Assembly: GCA_001642005.1 (NCBI GenBank)
Contig: LWCA01000314.1
Span: 1 to 32,681, forward strand
Source: Intoshia linei
Lineage: Eukaryota; Animalia; Orthonectida
Length of the DNA stretch: 32,681 nucleotides
Direction: 5' to 3'
Part shown: positions 14 through 30,069 of the stretch, in pieces
Numbering within the stretch: position 1 is the stretch's first letter
How the letters are laid out: each line of letters begins with the position of its first letter
Notes under the pieces: generated by a model
The model's database searches: none
Told to the model about the DNA's origin: nothing
What the model saw: only the letters and a program-made list of their open reading frames with translations
Translations under genes and position numbers: made by a program

Positions 14-946
14 ATGATTTCAACTCCTAGTAGTGATTTAAGTTTTTTTACACCGAGACTTGAAATTTTAAACAACGGTAGAACATATCAAAAAAATTCA
101 ACGCATTACATTCCCATGATAAGTTGCAGATTAAATGAAACTCCAAAGAATGTGCCGAGTTATTTCAATAATTGTAAACAATTACTATCCAATCAATCTA
201 CTGCTGATCCGTCTCAACAATACATCAAACTGCCAGTATTGCAATTATTAGATCTCGATATTTGGTCGGCATTCAACAAAGTAACCAATGAAATGATTGT
301 CAGGAGGGAAGGACGAAGTATCTTTCCAAGATTTTCACTTTGCGTTACAAATTTAAATCCGGACGTTTATTATACATTTGCACTGTGTTTTGTGAGGTAT
401 TAAAATTATTATACTTTAATATAATGTATTTTAATATATTTTTAGAACAAAAGAGTCGAAATTCAAATACGATAGAAAAAAATGGTGTGAAGTATTGGAA
501 TCTTCTGAATCAATAGAACGTAATATATAAAATTTAAATTAACTTTTTTTATTAATTGATTAATTTAGAAAGTCTTTCGTACAAACATCCAGATTCTCCA
601 CAATTAGGAAAGCGATGGAGTGAAATTATTAAATTTAACCGATTAAAAGTGTCAAATGCACGAAACGACAGTTATAAAGAACTGGTTTGATATATTTTCA
701 TTATTATTTATTTTTTTTAAACCATTTTAATTTATTCACAAGGTCAAACTAACGAGTCTGCGACAGTACGTTCCAATGATTGAAGTTTTTATACACAATT
801 TAATGACAAGTCATATGAGATGTATTAAAAGAGAAAAATTTGACGAGGCCAAATTTATTGTTGTTACAGCTTACAATAATCCAAAATTAGGTCAACTCAA
901 ATCTCAATTGAATCCTTATTCGAAGAAAATTAAATATAAATGTTAA
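14..946 (+). CDS. Divergent T-box transcription factor (Brachyury-like), 4 exons: 14-396, 446-519, 569-684, 743-946; ~258 aa (5' end may extend outside the window)
   Basis: GT-AG introns of 49, 49 and 58 nt join an open frame with T-domain motifs: IWSAFNKVTNEMIVRREGRSIFP ... YTFALCFVRTKESKFKYDRKKW ... YKHPDSPQLGKRW ... FNRLKVSN ... LTSLRQYVP ... FIVVTAYNNPKLGQLKSQLNPYSKKIKYKC*. AATAAA at ~974. TNEMIV, YxFxLxFV and LxSL match Brachyury signatures. Confidence 0.93.
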
Positions 947-7250: not shown

Positions 7251-8945
7251 CTATGCAAATTCTTGTGGTTTTAATTGTAATTTTTCCATTAAAATAAAAT
7301 TCAACAATCGATCATAATGCGTATTCAACGTTTCATTTTTTCGAGTCGAAATTGTATGATTTTGTTGGTTTAAAATGTCGCTATTGATAGTGTTCAAAGG
7401 TTGAAATGGTTCATTATTAATGGATTTTTCTAAATCTATTGTTTTTTGTCTATACCAGTATTTTTTTTCAATAATAAAATTGCCCATTCCATTCTCTTGA
7501 TTCAAGAAAGATGAATTCCAAAAAGATTTATTATTGACAAAAAATGTATTGTTTAGTTGATGTAAATTTTCCGATTCATTTTCATTTAAACATCTCCAAT
7601 ATACTTTCGAAATCGTATAATCAACAGTACTTTTTCCGGCATTTGCAGTTTCACCCTTTTCTTTTTTTAAAATATGCAATTTAGAAAAACTGTTATTTTT
7701 TCCAGGTTTGTCGATATTTTCAGAATCTTGAATTGTTGAACAATTCAAATTTATTCTTTCGACCATTTCACATTTTTCAATGGGAGATATGGAACAACGA
7801 GGTAAATTGAGCGTAAAGTCATAATTACAGGGTCTATCTGTGAAAAATGTGTTATTATTATTAATCTCATCATTTACATTTTTATCAATGGTTTTATCTT
7901 TATCTAGTTTTTTAAGTGATGTTGAAAAATAGTCATCATATTTTTTTAAGTTTTCAGTTTCTAAATAATTGTTAACATTTTGGTTAGTTTCACTTTTGTT
8001 ATTCTTATTTTTTTCTATGTCTAGTTGTAATTCTTTTAATTCCTTAGGTTGTATTATCCATTTTTTAATTTCTGTACTTTTTGTAATTTTGTCATTTGTT
8101 ATTTTTTCAGTTTTCTCAAGCATTTCCCCGGTAATAATTTCTCTTTTTTTTTTCAAATCTTTTTGTTCAGTGCAAATTGTTTCTTGTTTATTAGTTTCAT
8201 TATTGGTTTTATTTCGCTTTTTAGATAATTTGTAAAGATTTCCTATGGGTTCATTGTATCTTTTACTTACTTTTTCACGATTCTCGATTATTTTCCAGGG
8301 ATTTGCTAATTTTAACAATTTTTGAAGTTCCACATAATTTTTGTCTTTTTTGTTTTCCTTTTCAGTATTATTTGTGTTTTCATTTAATTTATCACTGATT
8401 ACTATAGGTCTATCTTCTATTTTTGGAATTTTTTTCCAAGGGTTAATAAATCGATCTTTTTTTAAACCATGTTTATTGTTTGCGTCATTTGAATTTTTTT
8501 TAGCAATTTCATTATCACAATTAACTTTTTTTGTCCTTGAAACTAATTTATTGAGATTTATCACAGGTGTGACGTCTATTTTTGTGATTTTTGAAATTTT
8601 ATTCCAAGGATAAATAAATTTTTTTTGTGTATTATTTATAGATTTTACTTGTAAAAGTGATGGAAAGTGAGCAAAGAAAGTTTTTGAATCTGTATTTTCA
8701 ACGCATATTGATTTCTCCACACAAGTTTCAATGTATTTCAATTTTTTATCTTCAATTCTCATTGTCACTTTAATATTAGTGTTATTGTGTTTGGAATTGT
8801 AATCATTATTATCTTTTTTATAACATTTTTTGGACAATCTTTTTCCATTTGTTTCAAGCCGGTTATTTAATGTTTGTCTGTTTTTTTTTGGGGTGGATTT
8901 TGTTGTATATACACACCAATCGTTTTCAGTGGTTTTCGATGGCAT
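7251..8945 (-). CDS. Intronless 564-aa Lys/Asn-rich protein of unknown function with three PW-centred repeats
   Basis: A 1695-nt stop-free frame is very unlikely by chance in DNA this AT-rich. Repeats: FIYPWNKI, FINPWKKI, LANPWKII. No recognisable domain. Confidence 0.8.
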   Translation of the reverse strand: MPSKTTENDWCVYTTKSTPKKNRQTLNNRLETNGKRLSKKCYKKDNNDYNSKHNNTNIKVTMRIEDKKLKYIETCVEKSICVENTDSKTFFAHFPSLLQVKSINNTQKKFIYPWNKISKITKIDVTPVINLNKLVSRTKKVNCDNEIAKKNSNDANNKHGLKKDRFINPWKKIPKIEDRPIVISDKLNENTNNTEKENKKDKNYVELQKLLKLANPWKIIENREKVSKRYNEPIGNLYKLSKKRNKTNNETNKQETICTEQKDLKKKREIITGEMLEKTEKITNDKITKSTEIKKWIIQPKELKELQLDIEKNKNNKSETNQNVNNYLETENLKKYDDYFSTSLKKLDKDKTIDKNVNDEINNNNTFFTDRPCNYDFTLNLPRCSISPIEKCEMVERINLNCSTIQDSENIDKPGKNNSFSKLHILKKEKGETANAGKSTVDYTISKVYWRCLNENESENLHQLNNTFFVNNKSFWNSSFLNQENGMGNFIIEKKYWYRQKTIDLEKSINNEPFQPLNTINSDILNQQNHTISTRKNETLNTHYDRLLNFILMEKLQLKPQEFA

Positions 8946-9689: not shown

Positions 9690-12554
9690 TTATTTGATAA
9701 AGTGAGTATTAATATGTAGTTTAAGAGGGAAGGTAGATGTATTAGTAATTGAATAGCTATTAGCTAAAAAAATATGAATATAATATAAATATAAATGAAC
9801 CTGCAGGAATAAAAAAGTCATCACCAGAATTAGCATGAATTTTCTTATTGTTTAGCATCACTAAAGCTGTACCCTTTAATACATTGCATACCTAGATAAA
9901 TTAATAAAAAAGTAAACGGAATAAATTTACCAAAAGAGTGTTAACGTCCGTTTTAGTGAGACCAGTAGATTTATTGATCTGAATAGTCAGCAATACAGAA
10001 CCAAACTTTTTTTCTCTAATGCGGTATCTCAGAGTAATATCCGCATTGTTAACGTTGTATTGGTTATCTGGTATTACCGAAATAAGACCACTTGATAATC
10101 TATATTTCACCGTTGGTTCAATATTTTTAATATTAGAAGACGTATAATCTCTCGGAATTAAAACATTTACTTTAAATTCTTGCGATTTTACTAATATTTT
10201 GTGTTGAATAGGTATAGTTGATCGATGTGAAATTAAGGAAGATGTGGACTTTAAGGTTTTCGATGCAATTTTACCTATAATGTAAATTAATTATCTTGTT
10301 AAAAAACTCACAAAATTGTATATCAATAAATTACTCCATATTGTAGATTCATAGTTTCTTTTAGACCTTCTGATGTTTGGGTATTTTTCTAAAAAATAAA
10401 ATTAAAAGTAAAAATAATAAAAAAATACCCAAATCATCATTGTTTCTCTTGCGCCGGTAATCAACATTCAAAGTATTTGTCATATAATTATATTCATCAC
10501 GTGGTACCTTAACAACAGTGTTGTCATAAGCGATGATGTCTTTGCTGATCAGTTTTTTATTTATCAGTACCTTCTTTTTTTTTTTCTTTTTAGTAAAAAT
10601 GTTTATAATTTTTGATCTGACTGATGGTTTCGAAGGTTTTAATGTAATTTTTGAATTATTAGAAGTACTCTTCTCAATAATTTCATCCACAATTTGGTCC
10701 GTTTCACAATTATTTTGACCAGTAAAACTATGAACAGATTTCACCAAAGAAATATCGGTTTTAGTAAAATGATCAGACTCAACGTTACCCATATCTACGG
10801 AAGTAATAGTGCATTGAGGTTCAGAAATTAAGGGTGGCGGAATTTTGCAATTTTCCCTTAAATTAGAAGAGCTGGTAACATTCTTTTCATTATTAATAGG
10901 TTTATCATGTGTTGAGGTATCATTGACATTCGAGAAAGCTATTTCGATAGAGCTCATCAATTTTGATTCTTCATCTAAATTAAGATTAATATCATAACTT
11001 TGATATAATTAATTTGACATAAAAAATACATTGATAACAAGGTGCGTTACTTTTGCACAATGTACAATATAATGTACAATATACATTATAAAATAATACA
11101 AATTAAAATTAAGATAAGAAAAATACAAAAGTGTCCCAAATTTTTATTATTCTTAAAATGTGTAACAATTTTTCAAAAATAAGGCGACATACACTTTGAG
11201 AATGATTGAAATAGTTGTAAATTGTACATTTAGCATCAAACCACAATTACATTAAAATGGTTAGAAACGATATTGATATTTTAAACAAAAAAGAATATGG
11301 AAATAATGAATTAAGATATTCAATGTAGATAAAATAAAAACATACTTATCGACATGGAATTACGACTAACTCTTACAGTTTTTTTAAAGTCTTCCATAAT
11401 GGAATATTCGGAAACATCATTACATCTAAATAAAGTAAGGAATAAATACAAACAGTTTACTCGTTTATTTTTTCAAATGCGTCTGCCTTTACGTCTAAAA
11501 AGTAAATTTAAAAATAAATTGAATTATTTTACTTTTAGCCTCAACACTTGAAACATCATCTAGATATGTCCTTACTGTTTCATGATACTCATTTACTTTT
11601 GCCTTTTTTTCCAATTTGTTTCTAAAAAGAATAAATACTAAAATTTACGAAATCAATTTATAATGCAATGAGGTCTGAGTGGAAGGGAGGATGGTGACAT
11701 GGATAATTTGTTATATCTAATCTTATCGTCCCGTTATAAATATGTGACAATTATTTTTAACCAACTTGTATAAATTACATATTGAATACACTGTATTATA
11801 TTGTGCTGCAAAAAAACTATATTCATTGTCATAAACAAGATTTATACGTTTAAATCTATGTTGTAACACAGGGCTCGGCAACCCTTTACATCTCATGACC
11901 ACTTTTTTATATCAATAAAAATTTAATAAGTATGTAATAGTATGTTCAACTTTGTTTTTTTTTTAAACTCAGTAAATACTTTTTTTCAAATTTTAGTCAA
12001 AGTACTCTAAAAAAATTGATGAATTTTCAGTTTTCGTTCTGAAAACGTAAAAATGCAATACATAAAATGTATGTTTCAAATTTTGGATAAAAATAAATTA
12101 TATTACTTAAAATAAATAACTAATATTTAAAAAAAGGTAATATTCGAATTTTATAATAAAATATTATCATTAGAATAGTAGATAAAATAGACAAAAATTG
12201 CTTATAAATTACTTTTTGTAGACATGAAGTTTTATTGTATTTTAAAATTCAGTTTCAATTAATTGTGGCGTAATCCTAGTTCTACGAATAGACGTGAATT
12301 ACCCCACTGCAAATAAATAATCTTTCAATTGATGCACTAATTGCAGGTATTAATAATTTAATTATCTAATTACTAGGGCGAATTATGTCATAAAAATAAA
12401 AAATTGTTCTAAAAAAATTGAACTAAAATACTAAGACATATTCACAGTATTAAATCTTAGACATTCAATAATATTAATTATAAACATACCTTCTTGTCCT
12501 TTTTTGTAGATTATTTATTTTTCTGAATAGCCTACTTCTATTTAACCGGCTCAT
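9690..12554 (-). CDS. CENPC: CENP-C/Mif2-like inner kinetochore protein, 9 exons (12554-12490, 11621-11533, 11494-11461, 11425-11346, 10974-10429, 10388-10335, 10274-9931, 9891-9801, 9763-9690), ~458 aa
   Basis: All 8 introns are GT-AG with compatible phases; the total is 1377 nt, ATG to TAA. Basic N-terminus MSRLNRSRLFRKINNLQKRTRR; low-complexity middle; CENP-C-motif-like YPNIRRSKRNYESTIW; C-terminal cupin FGSVLLTIQINKSTG...CNVLKGTALVMLNNKKIHANSGDDFFIPAANSYSITNTSTFPLKLHI. Confidence 0.8.
11869..11900 (+). mobile_element. hAT MITE left end in CENP-C-like intron 1
   Basis: CAGGGCTCGGCAACC preceded by TTGTAACA (nnnTAnnn). Right end not confidently located. Confidence 0.45.
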
Positions 12555-13084
12555 AAAATCAAATATTCAATATAATAGAATGTAGTTTGGAAATAAAGTT
12601 TTGATATGAATTATATTTACTTTTGCGCCATTATACATAAACAAATTAATTTACTATGGTATTAATATGTAAGTATGTAATTAATAGTATGGGATAAATT
12701 TTATAACAAAATATGCTAGAAATAATTTTTGTGTTGTAACAGTGAAGTTACAGTTCAAGTTGAAGCTTGTAGGTTTAAGTTCCGAATATAACAAATACAA
12801 GGTTGTTCATAATATTATAATAATTTATTTTTACATATTCTGTGGTTACTAATTCACTAATGAGTAGATAAATTAAATAAAATTTTGAATAGAATTAATT
12901 TGGTTTTATATGAACATGAAGGGAGCAGGTTTTGATAATGTTCATACTATACTGTAATATGAACATATATGAATGGTGATAATAATATAATTAAAAGTTT
13001 CAAAATGTCCCACTCAATAATAATCCCGTGATAACTTTTACATAAAAATATTTTTTTGGAATGATTTATTAACATTTTTTTATA

Positions 13085-13480
13085 GTTCCCATAAAATCAG
13101 TTATTTTCAATGATCGAGATTTTTTTTCTTGTTGAATTTCATCAATTATACCCCATATTTGAGGAAGTTTTGCATGTAGTACTTTTCTATTTCTTTTGAA
13201 CAAAGATGTGCATCATAATTTGTTACTGTATTTACCTTTTTGTTATGCTCATCATCTTCAGAATCAGATTCGTTTTTTACGCTCAATTCTTTCAATCGCT
13301 TTTCTATCAATTCGTTTAGAAATTAACTGTCATCTTTTATCTTTGTATCATAACTTTGCGGATCACACAATATTTCATTTTGTACTTCTTCATTAACACT
13401 ATTATGAATATCTAACTTTGCATTTTCCATTGATTTCGAGAAACAATTTTTGATGCGTTTTTGGTGTAGTATGCTTAATA
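13085..13480 (-). pseudogene. pogo/Tigger transposase C-terminal remnant
   Basis: RIKNCFSKS ... acidic ESDSEDDE ... LKITDFM with internal stops and a frameshift; typical DDE_1 C-terminal layout. Confidence 0.6.
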
Positions 13481-14009
13481 TCTATCTATTTGTGATTGTA
13501 ATTGCACTTGAAGTAATTATTACTTTTGTTACAACATACAGTAGTATATGACATACATGTAGTTTTGTGAAGCTGCATTTTCTATTCTAACAAATTAAAA
13601 AAAAAAGGAATAAATTAGATGTCCTGGTCGGTATGCGAGTGAACCTATCAAAAACAATGCAAAGATTTAGATCACTTCTCATTTCAAAGCAACAATAACG
13701 ATTCCATTAAAATTGGGGAGTAATTAATTTTTCAGTATTTAATTAAAATACTGACATTTTTTAATAAAAAATTTTCTGTATTTTAAAAATAAAATTGTCA
13801 GTATACACACTAAAATATTAGTAATAAAAAATATTTTGTCAGTTTTTAATTGCTTTCTTGTCAATAAATATATTAACTAGATCAGTATTCATCGAAAATT
13901 GTAAGTAACTCAACAAAAAAGTATATAGAAATAAACACATTTTATCAGTTTAATTCAAGTAACTAGTTAACTTCATTTATAATTAATATTGTTATAATTG
14001 ATTTTTAAT

Positions 14010-14076
14010 CAGGGGTGCACAGTCATTAAGATCAATATTTGGGGGTGCATAGGTCAAAAAAGGTTAAGAAACACTG
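14010..14076 (+). mobile_element. hAT MITE right end
   Basis: GGGGTGCA repeats, then AAAAAGGTTAAGAAACACTG followed by CGGTAAAC (nnnTAnnn). Confidence 0.6.
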
Positions 14077-14157
14077 CGGTAAACGAACGATAAAAAATTA
14101 GATGATTTGTAAATTAACTTTATTTTTTGTTAAATCAGGGGATGTCACGACTTTTAG

Positions 14158-14500
14158 TCAATCGATTTGATCTGAATTTTGCTTCTTAACATTGGTAACG
14201 ACTTCTTTTAAATCAGGTAATATTAAATTTTCAGCAATAGTATTAGGTTTACCATTTTTAGCAATTAATAAAGATATATTGTAAGACGCCTTTAATCCAC
14301 AAATTGGTTTTGTAACTATGCAAAGTTTTAAAAAATTTGGAATTTTGTTTAAAGTTTCATACTCAGTTTTTAATATTTTGAAATAATCAGCATTTTTTTC
14401 ACATTTATGTGGATGGAGTCGATACAAGTGATCTTTCATCTTAGAAGGCTTTATAGCATCATTGCTAAATATTTTTTTGCATAATAAGCACATTGGATTA
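14158..14500 (-). pseudogene. Buster-type hAT transposase N-terminal fragment (SCAND3/ZBED5-like)
   Basis: PMCLLCKKIFSNDAIKPSKMKDHL..LHP (BED-like finger) and KASYNISLLIAKNGKPNTIAENLILP; truncated. Confidence 0.85.
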
Positions 14501-14743
14501 GAATCTAATTAATAATTAATTAAACTATGGCCCGCAGGCCAATTTGGCCTTCAATTTAAATTAATAGTTTTAAATGTTAAGTACATAAAAATATGTTCAT
14601 TGTTCAAAAAGGACAATGTTCATATGAAAAAATCTTTTTTCATATGAATCTCTAACGTTTTTAACAAACCAAAATCGTCGTGTTCATATAGAACAGAATT
14701 GAAAATACAAGTTACACATATATTTATGTTTAATTGGAATTAA

Positions 14744-14830
14744 TTAATATTTTGTAACACCTCGTTTAGTATGTATGAGAGCCGTAATTCTCCCTGGCAT
14801 ACTATTAATACAGTCTTTTGCCAGTTTTTT
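14744..14830 (-). pseudogene. Tc1 transposase C-terminal fragment
   Basis: LAKDCINSMPGRITALIHTKRGVTKY* matches the Tc1 ending SMPxRxxAVIxxKGGxTKY. Confidence 0.7.
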
Positions 14831-14859
14831 CAAATTAGGAGAATTTATTGGAGATTTCT

Positions 14860-15050
14860 TTTCTTTTCCATTATTGTGCGATGTAGTCGTTCTACTTTAA
14901 CTATTTGTTGATGTGTGTAGGGTTCTCATGCTGTTTTGTTGATATTGAAAAGTTTACAGAGCTCATGGATTATTGAACATTCAAATTGCTTTCCTTGGTC
15001 GGTTTGAATTTGTTTTGGTGGTCCATATCTAATAACTATTTTTTTACCTA
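14860..15050 (-). pseudogene. Gypsy/Ginger-type integrase core fragment
   Basis: RYGPPKQIQTDQGKQFECSIIHELCKLFNINK, then frameshifted YTHQQIVKVERLHRTIM (second D and the E of the DDE triad). Confidence 0.8.
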
Positions 15051-15219
15051 CCGTTGTAAACCGTTTCATCAACCGGGAAAACCACCGCACAATTCTCTCG
15101 GTTTTCACCTCTGAAAAATTGTTTTTATAATAACATAAACAAAATACAGTTTTATAATACAGTTTTGATAGTTTATTTCAGTAGCTATAGAATTAGTTTT
15201 GCAAATTTTTTTTAAATTA

Positions 15220-18200
15220 ATGGGTTGCATTGTTTCTTCAGTAATGTTATTTTTCCATCATGTATTAATATAAATGTAGCTGGCTTGTTGTTGTACTGGA
15301 GCAGCGTGTTCTTTATGTTGCGCTCCTTTTACTAAATGCCGATCCTCAGTTTTAACAAGATTAACGTATTGCATTATTATAATATGTTTTGCCTTTTTGT
15401 GTTTATTTTTTACCAGATATGATGGAATTCAAGAAATTTTGGCAAAGGTATTTAAATTATAATAATTATCAAAATTCTATGAGTTCATTTATAGAGCAGT
15501 GGCCACTGGTCATCAAACTGGCCACAAAAAAATTTAAAAAAATGGATATAATCTAATTATTTATCATACAATCGTATCTAAATTATTAGAAACTTATCTT
15601 TAATTAATTCAGATAATACGTTGAGGTTTTAATTAGCGACATTTGATTTTTGTCTGACCTGCACAATTTTAATTTGGGGCTAATCCGATCCACAAGTTAA
15701 ATAGTCTGATTTCTACTGTTTTAGAGCAACAAATATTTAACTCATGGAGCAAGTGCAATTTATCTCGCAATCTAATATATCCAAGTTTATTTATCTGACG
15801 AAATTTTTGTAAAAAGGGGCTCATTTTTCCAATTTAATCATTTAAAAATGATATTCTTGAATATTATGTTTATTTTGTGTGCTTAATTTAAAATGCCAAG
15901 TTAAGACCCTTGGAGAGGTGGTTAGGGTCTATATGACTACGCATCGTTTGCATTATTTTAAAGGGATCTATTTTTCATTTTCTGGAGGCATCCTGTTGGT
16001 TAGGTTCGGCTTCAATCCAATTCATTAGTGAGTAACCAAATAATATTTTAATTGATAAAATACGTCACTCAAAATGATTAAACATTACTGTTTTAAGTTA
16101 TAGGTAAAATTCTGTATTGAATTTTAGATACCATATATCTGTAGTTCTGGGGATGTTTGCAAAAATATTTCTGGAGTTCAAGCAATTTTAAGACTTGGAT
16201 TTGTTATGGCTCTATTTCATTTTGTCATGTCCATTATTTTAATCAATGTTCAAGATTCAACAGATTGTAGAGTTGGCGTTCAAAATGGGTATTTGTTTGA
16301 TGATATAATATATATTTATTCAGATTTTGGGCTATTAAATCTTTGGGAATAATTGGAGGTGCTATTGGCATGTTGTTTGTACCTGCGGGTAAATTTGATA
16401 TTGTTATGGTATATGCTTCTACTGTGATTGGATTCATTTTTATCTTTATTCAAATGATATCCATCATATTTTTCTCCTACAGTATTCGAGATAAAATTTT
16501 TGATAAACAAGAAAATAGCGACAGCAAGGCATGGAAATGGTGTAATATTTATTTTTTTTATATTCAATATTTTCTACATACATCTGTAATTTGTTGTATC
16601 TTACAGTTACAGCACGGTTGGGTACCTCGTGCAACGGGTCACACTGCACATTTAATTTATCGCGGGTCGCACCAAGAAAAATTCTTCAATTTCACTTCGT
16701 TCCTGTTTTTAAAAATTTTTTTTAATCGATATTACATACCCTTATACCTATTTTCACTAGTTTAAGAATATTTTTAACTTAATAGTCAATACATTTACTC
16801 CTTAAATGTATTTGAATCCAGTAAATTCTCATATTCGGTAGAATTACAAAAATAATATTAAATCATTATTGTTTATTATTAACATAATTCACTCATACTT
16901 ATGATTTATTTTGCTTTTATCTATATGGCTAAATGTAATAAGCCAATTATAGTAGAAAATGTTTAAAACGGTGTTTAAAAGTTGAAACATTTAAAAATAA
17001 ATCATTTATATATCTACTCAAAGGGACAACAGAATTATTTTATGGGTCACTGGTTGCCTATCCCTGTCTGAGTGCTACATTATCATCGATTTTACTAATT
17101 TATCATTGATTTTTTCACCCAATTTTTAAACATTTTGAAGATTTTTCAAGATTATCGAACCGTATAAAAAAATTTATCATGAGTTCCTTAATAATTAAAA
17201 ACTAGCAAAAAATATTTAAACTAATACTTTTATGTATTATAATAATATATAAAAAAAATGAATATTAAAGTACTTGTTTGACCGTGAAGGCATCACTTAT
17301 TCGGATTGAAATTTTTTGTGTTTCTTAACAGGATACAACTATACCATCTGTATTTTTTATTCATTCTAGGGCTGTTTTGATTTTAAAAAAAAATTATTTT
17401 TTTTGAGGTTTTCATTTATGGAATGTTTATGATTTTAAATTTCAAACTATCCCTAAATATTTTGGAACATGTTTCATTTTTAAAACAAAGGGTAATTTGG
17501 GTTTTGAACATTAAGGTATGCGTTTTTGTGGCTGAAATTAACGACAATGTTAATGCATTTAAAACATGTCTCAGAATGTATGTTTTATTAAATTTTTGGG
17601 CTAATTTTTTTTAAACAAAAGGGAAAATTGGGTTTTTGAACCTGAAGCACTCAAATTCTGAAACTGAAAAATAGATAAAAACACGTCTTGCGAAAAACTG
17701 TATTAGAAATTTGGTTTTTTAAATTGTGCGATTGTCAATTTTTTCAATAAATGGTTACAAACAGACACACATACATTCGTTTTTATATAAGTAAAGGATA
17801 GTACAAACATTAGTGCGTATTAGCACATTAAATTAATATACATTATATTTTATAAGAAAATTATAATATCAATTTAAAAATAATCTAAAATTTTCTAATT
17901 TAATTTAAGATTCTCGCCCAGGTTGAGAATGGACGTCGAAAGATGCGGATGTTAAAGTCATAATTCACCATTGTTTTTTGAAAAATATAATTTTAACAGC
18001 GGACCAAGGCAGTGGTTCTCAACCCGTGTTCCGCGAAATTTAATAGGGGTTCCGTGAAATATAAATGCGATATTTTTCAAATTAAAGTTTTTCTAAATTA
18101 CTGTTGTATGCAATAAAACAACATCATTTCTCAAATTTAAATCAAATAAGTTTTAATAACTTCGTCTCTCAAAAACACGTCCAAGAATTAAAATCATCTT

Positions 18201-28920: not shown

Positions 28921-30069
28921 TTACAAACCAAGTATGAATTCAATTCCGAAATTTGAGCAATTTTTTGATTTTTTGACATTTAATTTTTCATAATTTAGAG
29001 GAGTTTTTCGTTTTGAAGAGTTACTAGATTTTATGGACGTTGTAGATAAATCGGATGTAATATTTCGATTACTATTTTCCGTTTTATTGTGGGGTGATTC
29101 ACTGCATTCTGATTTCGGTAAATCTTTATTTTCTACATCGTCAGTATTTTTCGATTCAACGTCTTTTATAATAGACTCTTTAGAGGTAGATAAATTTATG
29201 GAGGTTGATAATTCTTTGGAAGTTGATAATTTTTTTGAAATTGACAATTCTTGTGTTGATAATTTTTCCAAATTTTCAAGGCTATTTTGTTCATTCTCAC
29301 ATTTGTTGCTTGCCTTATCCGCCAATATAGATGAGCATTTCATTAAAAAATTTTGAGTTACTGTATCAAGAGTTGCATAATTGAGAGGTGGTGGCGATTC
29401 GCAGTCATCTTCATCGTCGACGTCTTCAATTCCCATGTATTGTCTAACTTTTCTTTGAGCATGCCGTCTTCTAAAATCTCCCTTCATGAAATCACTTTCA
29501 TTTGCATCGTGAATTGACCAATAGTGACCCTTTCCATTGGCAGATCGAGTTGATTTCACAAAACATTCGTTCAACGATAAATTATGTCTAATGCTATTCC
29601 TCCAACCGGGTCCTCTATTTCTGAAATACGCGTATTTAGACTGAATCCAATCGTAAATTTCACTCAATACCAATTTTTTGTCATCCGCAAGTAAAATTGC
29701 CATTGAAATTAATCCAATATAACTATGCGGAGGTTTTGGGTCTGACAGGGTTAAATGACTTTGGTAAGGTAACGCATAAAAACTATTATACATGGCTTGA
29801 TTATAGTGATACTTTGAAATCATATTTTGGTACGCTTGAGGGTAAGAATAATTAATCATTTGTTGATAATTTGGCATTTGATATGGCATTTGAGAATACA
29901 TGGGATTTTTAATGCTATTGTTGGTCAAATATGAAACGGTATAAGAGCTAGAAAGGTATTTTTTTGTGGTTGAAAAGTCTAATCTCTTTTCATAGGCTTC
30001 CAGATCACTTTTATCTTGTTCAGAAACAGATTTCTTTTTTTTATCGTCAAAATTATCAGGTTGGTTCAT
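28921..30069 (-). CDS. FoxQ2: Forkhead transcription factor FoxQ2 (fd102C-like), intronless, 382 aa
   Basis: KPPHSYIGLISMAIL...KLVLSEIY...YFRNRGPGWRNSIRHNLSLNECFVKSTRSANGKGHYW...DFMKGDFRRRHAQRKVR is diagnostic for FoxQ2. C-terminal eh1 motif FGIEFILG. Confidence 0.95.
   Translation of the reverse strand: MNQPDNFDDKKKKSVSEQDKSDLEAYEKRLDFSTTKKYLSSSYTVSYLTNNSIKNPMYSQMPYQMPNYQQMINYSYPQAYQNMISKYHYNQAMYNSFYALPYQSHLTLSDPKPPHSYIGLISMAILLADDKKLVLSEIYDWIQSKYAYFRNRGPGWRNSIRHNLSLNECFVKSTRSANGKGHYWSIHDANESDFMKGDFRRRHAQRKVRQYMGIEDVDDEDDCESPPPLNYATLDTVTQNFLMKCSSILADKASNKCENEQNSLENLEKLSTQELSISKKLSTSKELSTSINLSTSKESIIKDVESKNTDDVENKDLPKSECSESPHNKTENSNRNITSDLSTTSIKSSNSSKRKTPLNYEKLNVKKSKNCSNFGIEFILGL

What the first reader, a model, noticed from the sequence alone, without database searches (positions are those of the whole stretch)
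9690..12554. Cryptic, minimal CENP-C-like kinetochore gene hidden in micro-introns
Seen: nine exons splice in frame from ATG 12554 to TAA 9690, while the ORF track shows only two unrelated-looking pieces; the 'GIFLLFLLLILFFR' tail of ORF 10361-10960 is really a 40-nt intron. Known: CENP-C/Mif2 has a basic N-terminal Mis12-binding segment, a disordered middle, an R...YW CENP-C motif that binds the CENP-A nucleosome, and a C-terminal cupin dimerisation domain (..G.F.VP.GN.Y.I.N..). All appear here in that order. Inference: a ~458-aa CENP-C, about half vertebrate length, divergent enough to be missed or scored as absent.
Basis: partly seen in the sequence, partly recalled or inferred. Interest (0 to 1): 0.8.

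Follow-up and report, generated by a model that had tools for sequence, protein, structure and literature searches.

The report
Short divergent CENP-C gene in Intoshia
This stretch of the genome of the tiny parasitic worm Intoshia linei encodes an unusually short and divergent version of CENP-C, the protein that anchors the chromosome-segregation machinery to centromeres. The gene is already in public records, but only as an unnamed "hypothetical protein".

Summary
Nine GT-AG exons on the minus strand (12554 to 9690) join in frame to 458 aa.

The gene is not hidden. Exons 2-9 (437 aa) are identical to the public 443-aa model OAF69239.1 / A0A177B4M4, "hypothetical protein A3Q56_03032" of Intoshia linei. 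Only exon 1 differs, and it is unresolved. The public exon 1 (13255) lies in DNA with at least three further copies in the genome.

The CENP-C reading is well supported but just under formal thresholds:
- Pfam CENP-C_C is the best family: E 3.9e-6, 27.5 bits against a cut-off of 29, and 10 bits above generic cupins.
- The best solved structure is the chicken CENP-C cupin.
- The top three protein-language-model neighbours are Mif2/CENP-C clusters.
- RRSKR followed by the protein's only tryptophan sits 88 aa upstream of the cupin.
- The gene has no paralogue in the genome.

The motif lacks the canonical proline and tyrosine and is two residues short. The claimed N-terminal Mis12-binding segment rests on the unverified exon 1.

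Verdict: a new, divergent member of a known family.

The parts
12490..12554 (-). It has an ATG, encodes a 21-aa basic peptide, and ends in a phase-2 donor AAG|GTATGT. Unverified.
   Evidence: In frame with E2. Lies in unique DNA between dispersed repeats. It is one of three start exons with good donors.
13236..13255 (-). Exon 1 of the public model OAF69239.1 (6 codons plus 2 nt, donor AAG|GTAAAT). Doubtful.
   Evidence: Located. It lies inside window 12903-13461, which has further copies on contigs C1677 (85%), C658 (82%) and C765.
11901..12372 (.). Dispersed repeat inserted in intron 1 (46 matches elsewhere in the genome, 73-100% identity). It explains the unusual 868-nt intron.
   Evidence: the copies cover query positions 329-800 of window 12700..11630.
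11533..11621 (-). Exon 2 (89 nt)
   Evidence: Same junctions as public P0001. Own-genome match.
11461..11494 (-). Exon 3 (34-nt micro-exon)
11346..11425 (-). Exon 4 (80 nt)
10429..10974 (-). Exon 5 (546 nt). Encodes a low-complexity S/T/N-rich middle region, then a lysine-rich basic stretch.
   Evidence: No credible Pfam family (only TMEM71 at E 0.069).
10335..10388 (-). Exon 6 (54 nt). Carries the CENP-C-like motif: RRSKR at residues 263-267 of P0001 and the protein's only Trp at 274.
   Evidence: Motif DNA is 10371-10336.
9931..10274 (-). Exon 7 (344 nt). Encodes the linker or pre-cupin region and the first part of the cupin. The Pfam match starts at about 10014.
9801..9891 (-). Exon 8 (91 nt). 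Core cupin strands, ending in GDDFFIPA.
   Evidence: On its own it weakly hits generic cupins. It is part of the PF11699 match on P0001.
9690..9763 (-). Exon 9 (74 nt including TAA 9692-9690). End of the cupin (ANSYSITN...). An AATAAA hexamer at 9694-9689 overlaps the stop codon.

Best explanation
The locus is the single-copy CENP-C (Mif2) orthologue of the orthonectid Intoshia linei, a protein of about 440-460 aa.

Inferred mechanism, by analogy with characterised CENP-Cs:
- The C-terminal cupin, which lacks the metal ligands of enzymatic cupins, dimerises the protein.
- The arginine-rich RRSKR...W segment, about 90 aa upstream, docks on the centromeric (CenH3) nucleosome. The arginine would contact the H2A/H2B acidic patch and the tryptophan the CenH3 C-terminal tail.
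- The N-terminal part recruits the Mis12/Ndc80 outer kinetochore.

Shown here: the exon structure, the cupin family assignment at near-threshold significance, the presence and position of the motif, and single-copy status. Inferred: every binding activity, and the true first exon.
For: -: the nine exons join in frame, and exons 2-9 are identical to public P0001.
- P0001 is OAF69239.1, a hypothetical protein of Intoshia linei.
- PF11699 CENP-C_C gives E 3.9e-6 and 27.5 bits, covering 68 of 85 profile positions (residues 362-430). Cupin_2 gives 17.2 bits and MPI_cupin 16.6.
- the database's precomputed Pfam label for P0001 is PF11699.
- the best PDB sequence hit is 7x85_A CENP-C (E 0.025). The alignment shows G-x5-P-x-(G/A)-x2-Y-x3-N, with Tyr in place of the metal-binding His of cupin motif 2 in both proteins. 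Chicken dimer-interface residue H843 aligns with H436. 7X85 is chicken CENP-C 677-864.
- the three best ESM-Atlas feature neighbours are Mif2/CENP-C cupin clusters (0.92-0.93, 178-185 shared features of 256). CENP-C clusters also appear among the structural neighbours.
- the only Trp of the protein lies 7 residues after RRSKR. A relaxed motif occurs in 65 of 200,000 shuffles of the sequence.
- The gap between motif and cupin is 88 aa. The literature gives about 100 aa (PMC4359364).
- The motif sits on its own small exon, as reported for plant and animal CENP-C (PMC549713).
- no paralogue in the genome.
- divergent H3-like genes that are candidate CenH3 partners.
- Ndc80 is present at 95.6 bits.
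Against: - The Pfam score is 1.5 bits below the curated cut-off.
- phmmer with exon 7 against 1.84 billion representatives found no relative at all. The word-indexed search with residues 255-443 found only the protein itself.
- The motif lacks the canonical Pro and Tyr and is two residues shorter than RxxxxPxxYW (PMC4830207).
- The single-sequence AlphaFold model was unusable (pLDDT 35), so no fold comparison of my own could be made.
- ESM structural neighbours include bacterial cupins at similar TM-scores.
- No transcript or localisation data exist, and the first exon is unresolved.
Confidence: 0.8

Rival explanations
1. It is a lineage-specific nuclear protein that happens to end in a generic, non-enzymatic cupin. 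It has no kinetochore role, and the RRSKR...W segment is just part of a basic, nuclear-localisation-like stretch.
For: The Pfam CENP-C_C score is below its cut-off. Exon 8 alone hits only generic cupins. Bacterial cupins appear among the structural neighbours. No sequence relatives were found. The motif is non-canonical.
Against: CENP-C_C beats every other cupin family by 10 bits. The best PDB hit is CENP-C. The top three ESM feature hits are all CENP-C clusters. The motif-to-cupin order and spacing match CENP-C. The single Trp placed next to RRSKR is unlikely by chance (3 in 10,000 shuffles).
Confidence: 0.1
2. The gene model is partly wrong. The 5' exons (E1-E4), and perhaps E5, belong to another transcript or are mis-predicted. 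The real product would be shorter, starting at an internal Met, or it would have further upstream exons.
For: Three alternative start exons join E2 in frame. The region upstream of E2 is full of repeats and transposon debris. E2-E4 have no homology support. No RNA data are available.
Against: All junctions are GT-AG, with intron sizes typical of the genome. E2 has no in-frame ATG and is closed upstream, so it needs an upstream exon.
Confidence: 0.07
3. It is a decaying or repurposed CENP-C. The cupin is kept but the CenH3-binding motif is degenerating, as reported for holocentric dragonflies. The protein would then no longer read CenH3 nucleosomes.
For: The motif is two residues short and lacks Pro and Tyr (PMC4830207). 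There is a precedent of a decayed motif with an intact cupin (PMC4359364). No canonical motif is encoded anywhere in the genome.
Against: The arginine cluster and a tryptophan, the residues shown to matter for nucleosome binding, are retained. Divergent H3-like genes that could be CenH3 exist.
Confidence: 0.03

Closest known systems
Vertebrate CENP-C (chicken 864 aa, PDB 7X85 cupin; human 943 aa)
   Same: Both have a C-terminal cupin with the G-x5-P-x-G/A-x2-Y-x3-N signature, in which Tyr replaces the metal-binding His. A His is conserved at chicken dimer residue H843. Both have an arginine-rich motif upstream, and the domain order is the same.
   Different: The Intoshia protein is about half the length. 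It has no detectable central region, CENP-C_N or CENP-C_mid domains (Pfam). The motif is shortened by two residues and lacks Pro and Tyr. Chicken dimer residue Y799 aligns with Asn. Sequence similarity is very low (16.7 bits by phmmer).
Yeast Mif2p / Pfam PF11699 (Mif2/CENP-C like)
   Same: It is the best-scoring Pfam family and covers 68 of 85 profile positions. Overall size is similar (Mif2p is 549 aa per PMC549713).
   Different: It scores 27.5 bits, under the 29-bit gathering threshold. There is no Mif2_N match.
Dragonfly CenpC with intact cupin and decayed CenpC motif (Drinnenberg et al. 2014, PMC4359364)
   Same: A recognisable CENP-C cupin is combined with a non-canonical motif.
   Different: Here the arginine cluster and a Trp persist, and CenH3-like genes are present in the genome.
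M18BP1/KNL2 proteins carrying a CENP-C-like motif
   Same: Both have an arginine-rich motif with aromatic residues.
   Different: Those proteins have SANTA/Myb domains and no cupin. This protein has a cupin and no such domains.

Membership tests
CENP-C / Mif2 | C-terminal CENP-C-type cupin (Pfam PF11699) | tested here: inconclusive
   E 3.9e-6 and 27.5 bits against a curated cut-off of 29. It is the best family, 10 bits above Cupin_2. The precomputed label is PF11699. The best PDB hit is the chicken CENP-C cupin. The top three ESM feature hits are CENP-C clusters. This leans strongly towards met, but the formal threshold is missed.
CENP-C / Mif2 | CENPC motif: an arginine-rich first half and the core RxxxxPxx(Y/W)W | tested here: inconclusive
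   RRSKR is present at 263-267 and the only Trp at 274. Pro and Tyr are absent, and the R-to-W spacing is two residues short. The strict back-translated motif has no hit anywhere in the genome (positive control). Known CENP-Cs with degenerate motifs exist.
CENP-C / Mif2 | Cupin about 100 aa downstream of the motif | tested here: met
   W274 to the Pfam start at 362 is 88 aa. The expected spacing is given in PMC4359364.
CENP-C / Mif2 | Single-copy gene | tested here: met
   the only matches to P0001 in the 41.6-Mb assembly are its own exons; no other PF11699 match. That six-frame search also missed this locus, so it is weak evidence.
CENP-C / Mif2 | N-terminal Mis12-complex binding region | not testable with these tools
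   The first exon is unresolved. No profile exists for this short motif. Mis12 itself gives only a weak hint in the genome (E 0.036).
CENP-C / Mif2 | Cupin homodimerisation and centromere localisation dependent on CenH3 | not testable with these tools
   These need experiments. The AlphaFold single-sequence model was unusable.
Enzymatic or metal-binding cupins (Cupin_2, mannose-6-phosphate isomerase) | Conserved His/Glu metal ligands of cupin motifs 1 and 2 | tested here: not met
   Read directly from P0001. There is no HxH...E in the motif-1 region, which has no His between 350 and 405. In motif 2 the His position is Tyr. These families score only 15-17 bits, below their cut-offs. The motif definitions are from my own knowledge of the cupin superfamily.

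The most novel reading that the evidence does not exclude
Intoshia may carry one of the smallest animal CENP-Cs. Its nucleosome-reading motif is contracted by two residues and lacks the conserved Pro and Tyr. It sits on a 54-nt exon, half the size of the 105-108-bp motif exon conserved between plants and animals. That would imply either a changed docking geometry on a co-evolved, very divergent CenH3, or a CENP-C on its way to CenH3-independence in an extremely reduced animal.
Probability: 0.2. Interest if true: 0.6.

Novelty: new member of a known kind. Interest (0 to 1): 0.35.

Why it matters
Orthonectids are among the most reduced and fastest-evolving animals, and nothing has been published on their kinetochore. 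Full-text searches for Intoshia or orthonectid with kinetochore or CENP-C returned no paper.

Naming this unnamed public protein as CENP-C prevents a false 'loss' call in comparative kinetochore surveys. It also gives a compact natural variant, about 450 aa with a shortened motif, for asking which parts of CENP-C are truly indispensable. It is an annotation-level advance, not a new kind of system.

Tried and rejected
- The six-frame Pfam PF11699 search of the whole genome gave nothing, not even this locus. The cupin is split over three exons, so this negative says little.
- Exon-by-exon Pfam and PDB searches gave only weak generic cupin hits for exon 8 and nothing for exons 7 and 9.
- phmmer of exon 7 against 1.84 billion representatives found only the protein itself and a spurious repeat protein, P0002.
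- The search for homologous proteins on residues 255-443 found only the protein itself.
- AlphaFold2 on P0001 without an alignment gave pLDDT 35. It is unusable, so I ran no fold search. No homologues could be fetched to build an alignment, so I did not spend the second structure job.
- The joined step was left out. My own spliced model was never sent to any search or fold tool. The exons were concatenated only inside one script, to check frame and length and to compare with P0001. Whole-protein searches used the public record P0001, which one search returned.
- A 33-nt intron 6 (donor at 10307) and a donor at 10311 were considered and rejected. The first is implausibly short, and the second does not join exon 7 in frame.
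- A hAT-transposase reading of the repeat in intron 1 got no Pfam support.
- The contig is not human. It is Intoshia linei.

Full report
**What the window is.**
The window is contig C1805 of a 41.6-Mb, 3520-contig assembly with about 25% G+C. It carries metazoan genes: a T-box fragment, a forkhead gene and a Serinc fragment. The protein found at the locus is OAF69239.1 / UniProt A0A177B4M4, "hypothetical protein A3Q56_03032 [Intoshia linei]". So the organism is the orthonectid Intoshia linei, not human.

**Observation.**
Reading the minus strand and mapping open segments in three frames, I placed nine exons:

| Exon | Coordinates |
|---|---|
| E1 | 12554-12490 |
| E2 | 11621-11533 |
| E3 | 11494-11461 |
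| E4 | 11425-11346 |
| E5 | 10974-10429 |
| E6 | 10388-10335 |
| E7 | 10274-9931 |
| E8 | 9891-9801 |
| E9 | 9763-9690 |

- A script check gives 1377 nt, 458 codons and one terminal stop.
- All eight introns are GT..AG and strongly A+T-rich. Their lengths are 868, 38, 35, 371, 40, 60, 39 and 37 nt.
- The hydrophobic tail of ORF 10361-10960 is indeed read-through of the 40-nt intron 5.
- Such introns are normal for this genome, whose published median is 57 bp with most above 30 bp (PMC6543705).
- An AATAAA hexamer (9694-9689) overlaps the TAA stop.

**The gene is not cryptic.**
phmmer with exon 7 against 1.84 billion representative proteins returned a 443-aa protein, P0001, at 100% identity. 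The public annotation therefore already contains the gene, but without a name. I used P0001, a database record returned by a tool, for whole-protein searches. My own joined model was never sent to a search or fold tool. Exons were otherwise searched one by one by reference.

**The first exon is open.**
- The public model starts at 13255 (6 codons plus 2 nt, donor AAG|GTAAAT). A third start at 12631 also joins E2 in frame.
- Window 12903-13461, which holds the public exon 1, has further copies on contigs C1677, C658 and C765.
- Window 13446-14502 is a multi-copy element with a weak BED-finger signal, and 14929-15177 has a weak integrase signal.
- A roughly 470-bp dispersed repeat, with 46 matches elsewhere in the genome, fills 11901-12372.
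That makes it at least as plausible as the public one, but nothing here proves it.

**What the protein is: the cupin.**
- On P0001, the best Pfam family is CENP-C_C (PF11699): E 3.9e-6, 27.5 bits, residues 362-430 on profile positions 9-76 of 85. This is 1.5 bits under the curated cut-off.
- Generic cupins score 15-17 bits. The database's own precomputed label is PF11699.
- The best solved-structure sequence match is 7x85_A, "CENP-C" (E 0.025). This is chicken CENP-C 677-864.
- In that alignment both proteins share G-x5-P-x-(G/A)-x2-Y-x3-N. This is cupin motif 2 with Tyr where metal-binding cupins have His. The motif definition is from my own knowledge.
- Chicken dimer-interface residue H843 aligns with His436, and Y799 aligns with Asn392. 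These alignments assume a five-residue tag offset in the chain numbering.
- The motif-1 region contains no His, so an enzymatic cupin is unlikely.
- ESM-Atlas feature neighbours 1-3 are Mif2/CENP-C cupin clusters (0.92-0.93, 178-185 shared features). Its structural neighbours mix CENP-C clusters with bacterial cupins.

**What the protein is: the motif.**
- Exon 6 encodes RRSKR (263-267) followed six residues later by Trp274, the only tryptophan in the protein.
- A relaxed pattern occurs in 65 of 200,000 composition-preserving shuffles.
- The published core is RxxxxPxx(Y/W)W, in which the Arg and the aromatic residues are required for nucleosome binding (PMC4830207). Here Pro and Tyr are missing and the spacing is two residues shorter.
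- The distance to the cupin is 88 aa, which fits the "about 100 amino acids" reported for animal and fungal CenpC (PMC4359364).
- The motif sitting on its own small exon echoes the modular 105-108-bp motif exon of plants and animals (PMC549713). Here that exon is only 54 nt.

**Is it the only candidate?**
- P0001 has no paralogue in the assembly.
- A strict back-translated canonical motif has zero hits genome-wide. A relaxed control pattern recovers this locus among 63 matches, the number expected by chance (71 for the reversed control pattern), which shows the search works.
- The six-frame PF11699 search found nothing, but it also missed this locus, so it is weak evidence.

**Context.**
- The genome encodes canonical H3 and H3.3-like genes.
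- It also encodes strongly divergent H3-fold genes: on C1585 (two exons), on C1965 (150-aa ORF) and a broken-looking one on C863. These are plausible CenH3 partners.
- Ndc80 is present at 95.6 bits. Mis12 gives only a weak hint (E 0.036).
- CENP-N was not found, and the CENP-T_C hits look like cross-hits to ordinary histone genes. Given short exons and divergence, these negatives mean little.

**Mechanism.**
The most likely reading (about 0.8) is a bona fide, very divergent and compact CENP-C. By analogy, the cupin dimerises the protein, RRSKR...W docks on the CenH3 nucleosome, and the N-terminal part recruits the outer kinetochore. Only the sequence-level features are shown here. All activities are inferred.

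Rivals are:
- a non-kinetochore cupin protein (0.1);
- a partly wrong gene model at the 5' end (0.07);
- a CENP-C whose CenH3-reading motif is decaying, as in dragonflies (0.03).

**Limits.**
- No homologue could be retrieved, so no alignment was available.
- The single-sequence AlphaFold model was unusable (pLDDT 35), and no fold search was run.
- No RNA data could be reached.
- No paper mentions this protein, or orthonectid kinetochores.

**Verdict.**
This is a new, divergent member of a known family, of moderate interest.

Noticed in passing
window 11901-12372: A dispersed repeat of about 470 bp with 46 matches elsewhere in the genome (73-100% identity). It contains a short peptide that reminded me of a hAT dimerisation domain, but Pfam gave no hit.
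   Followed up: partly
window 12903-15177, minus strand: Transposon debris upstream of the gene. It includes a multi-copy element with a BED-finger-like ORF (14161-14508, Pfam E 0.006) and an integrase-like fragment (14929-15177, rve E 0.002). The public gene model's first exon (13255) sits inside the repeated part.
   Followed up: partly
window 7251-8945, minus strand: A 564-aa uninterrupted ORF, K/N-rich, directly downstream of the CENP-C-like gene. It has no Pfam family at E<=1.
   Followed up: partly
window 14-403 (+), 28921-30069 (-), 16343-16765 (+): A T-box exon (42.9 bits), a single-exon forkhead gene of 382 aa (112 bits) and a Serinc fragment (38.9 bits).
   Followed up: partly
G000 contigs C1585:6186-6446 + 7778-7927 (+), C1965:5276-5725 (-), C863:4186-4392 (+): Three very divergent H3-fold genes or fragments that are candidate CenH3s. 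The C863 copy has a stop just upstream of the fold. Which one, if any, is the centromeric histone was not resolved.
   Followed up: partly
window 11726-11911, minus strand (inside intron 1): A 62-aa open segment, relatively G+C-rich, just downstream of the dispersed repeat. It has no family hit. It could be more repeat sequence or an unrecognised exon.
   Followed up: no
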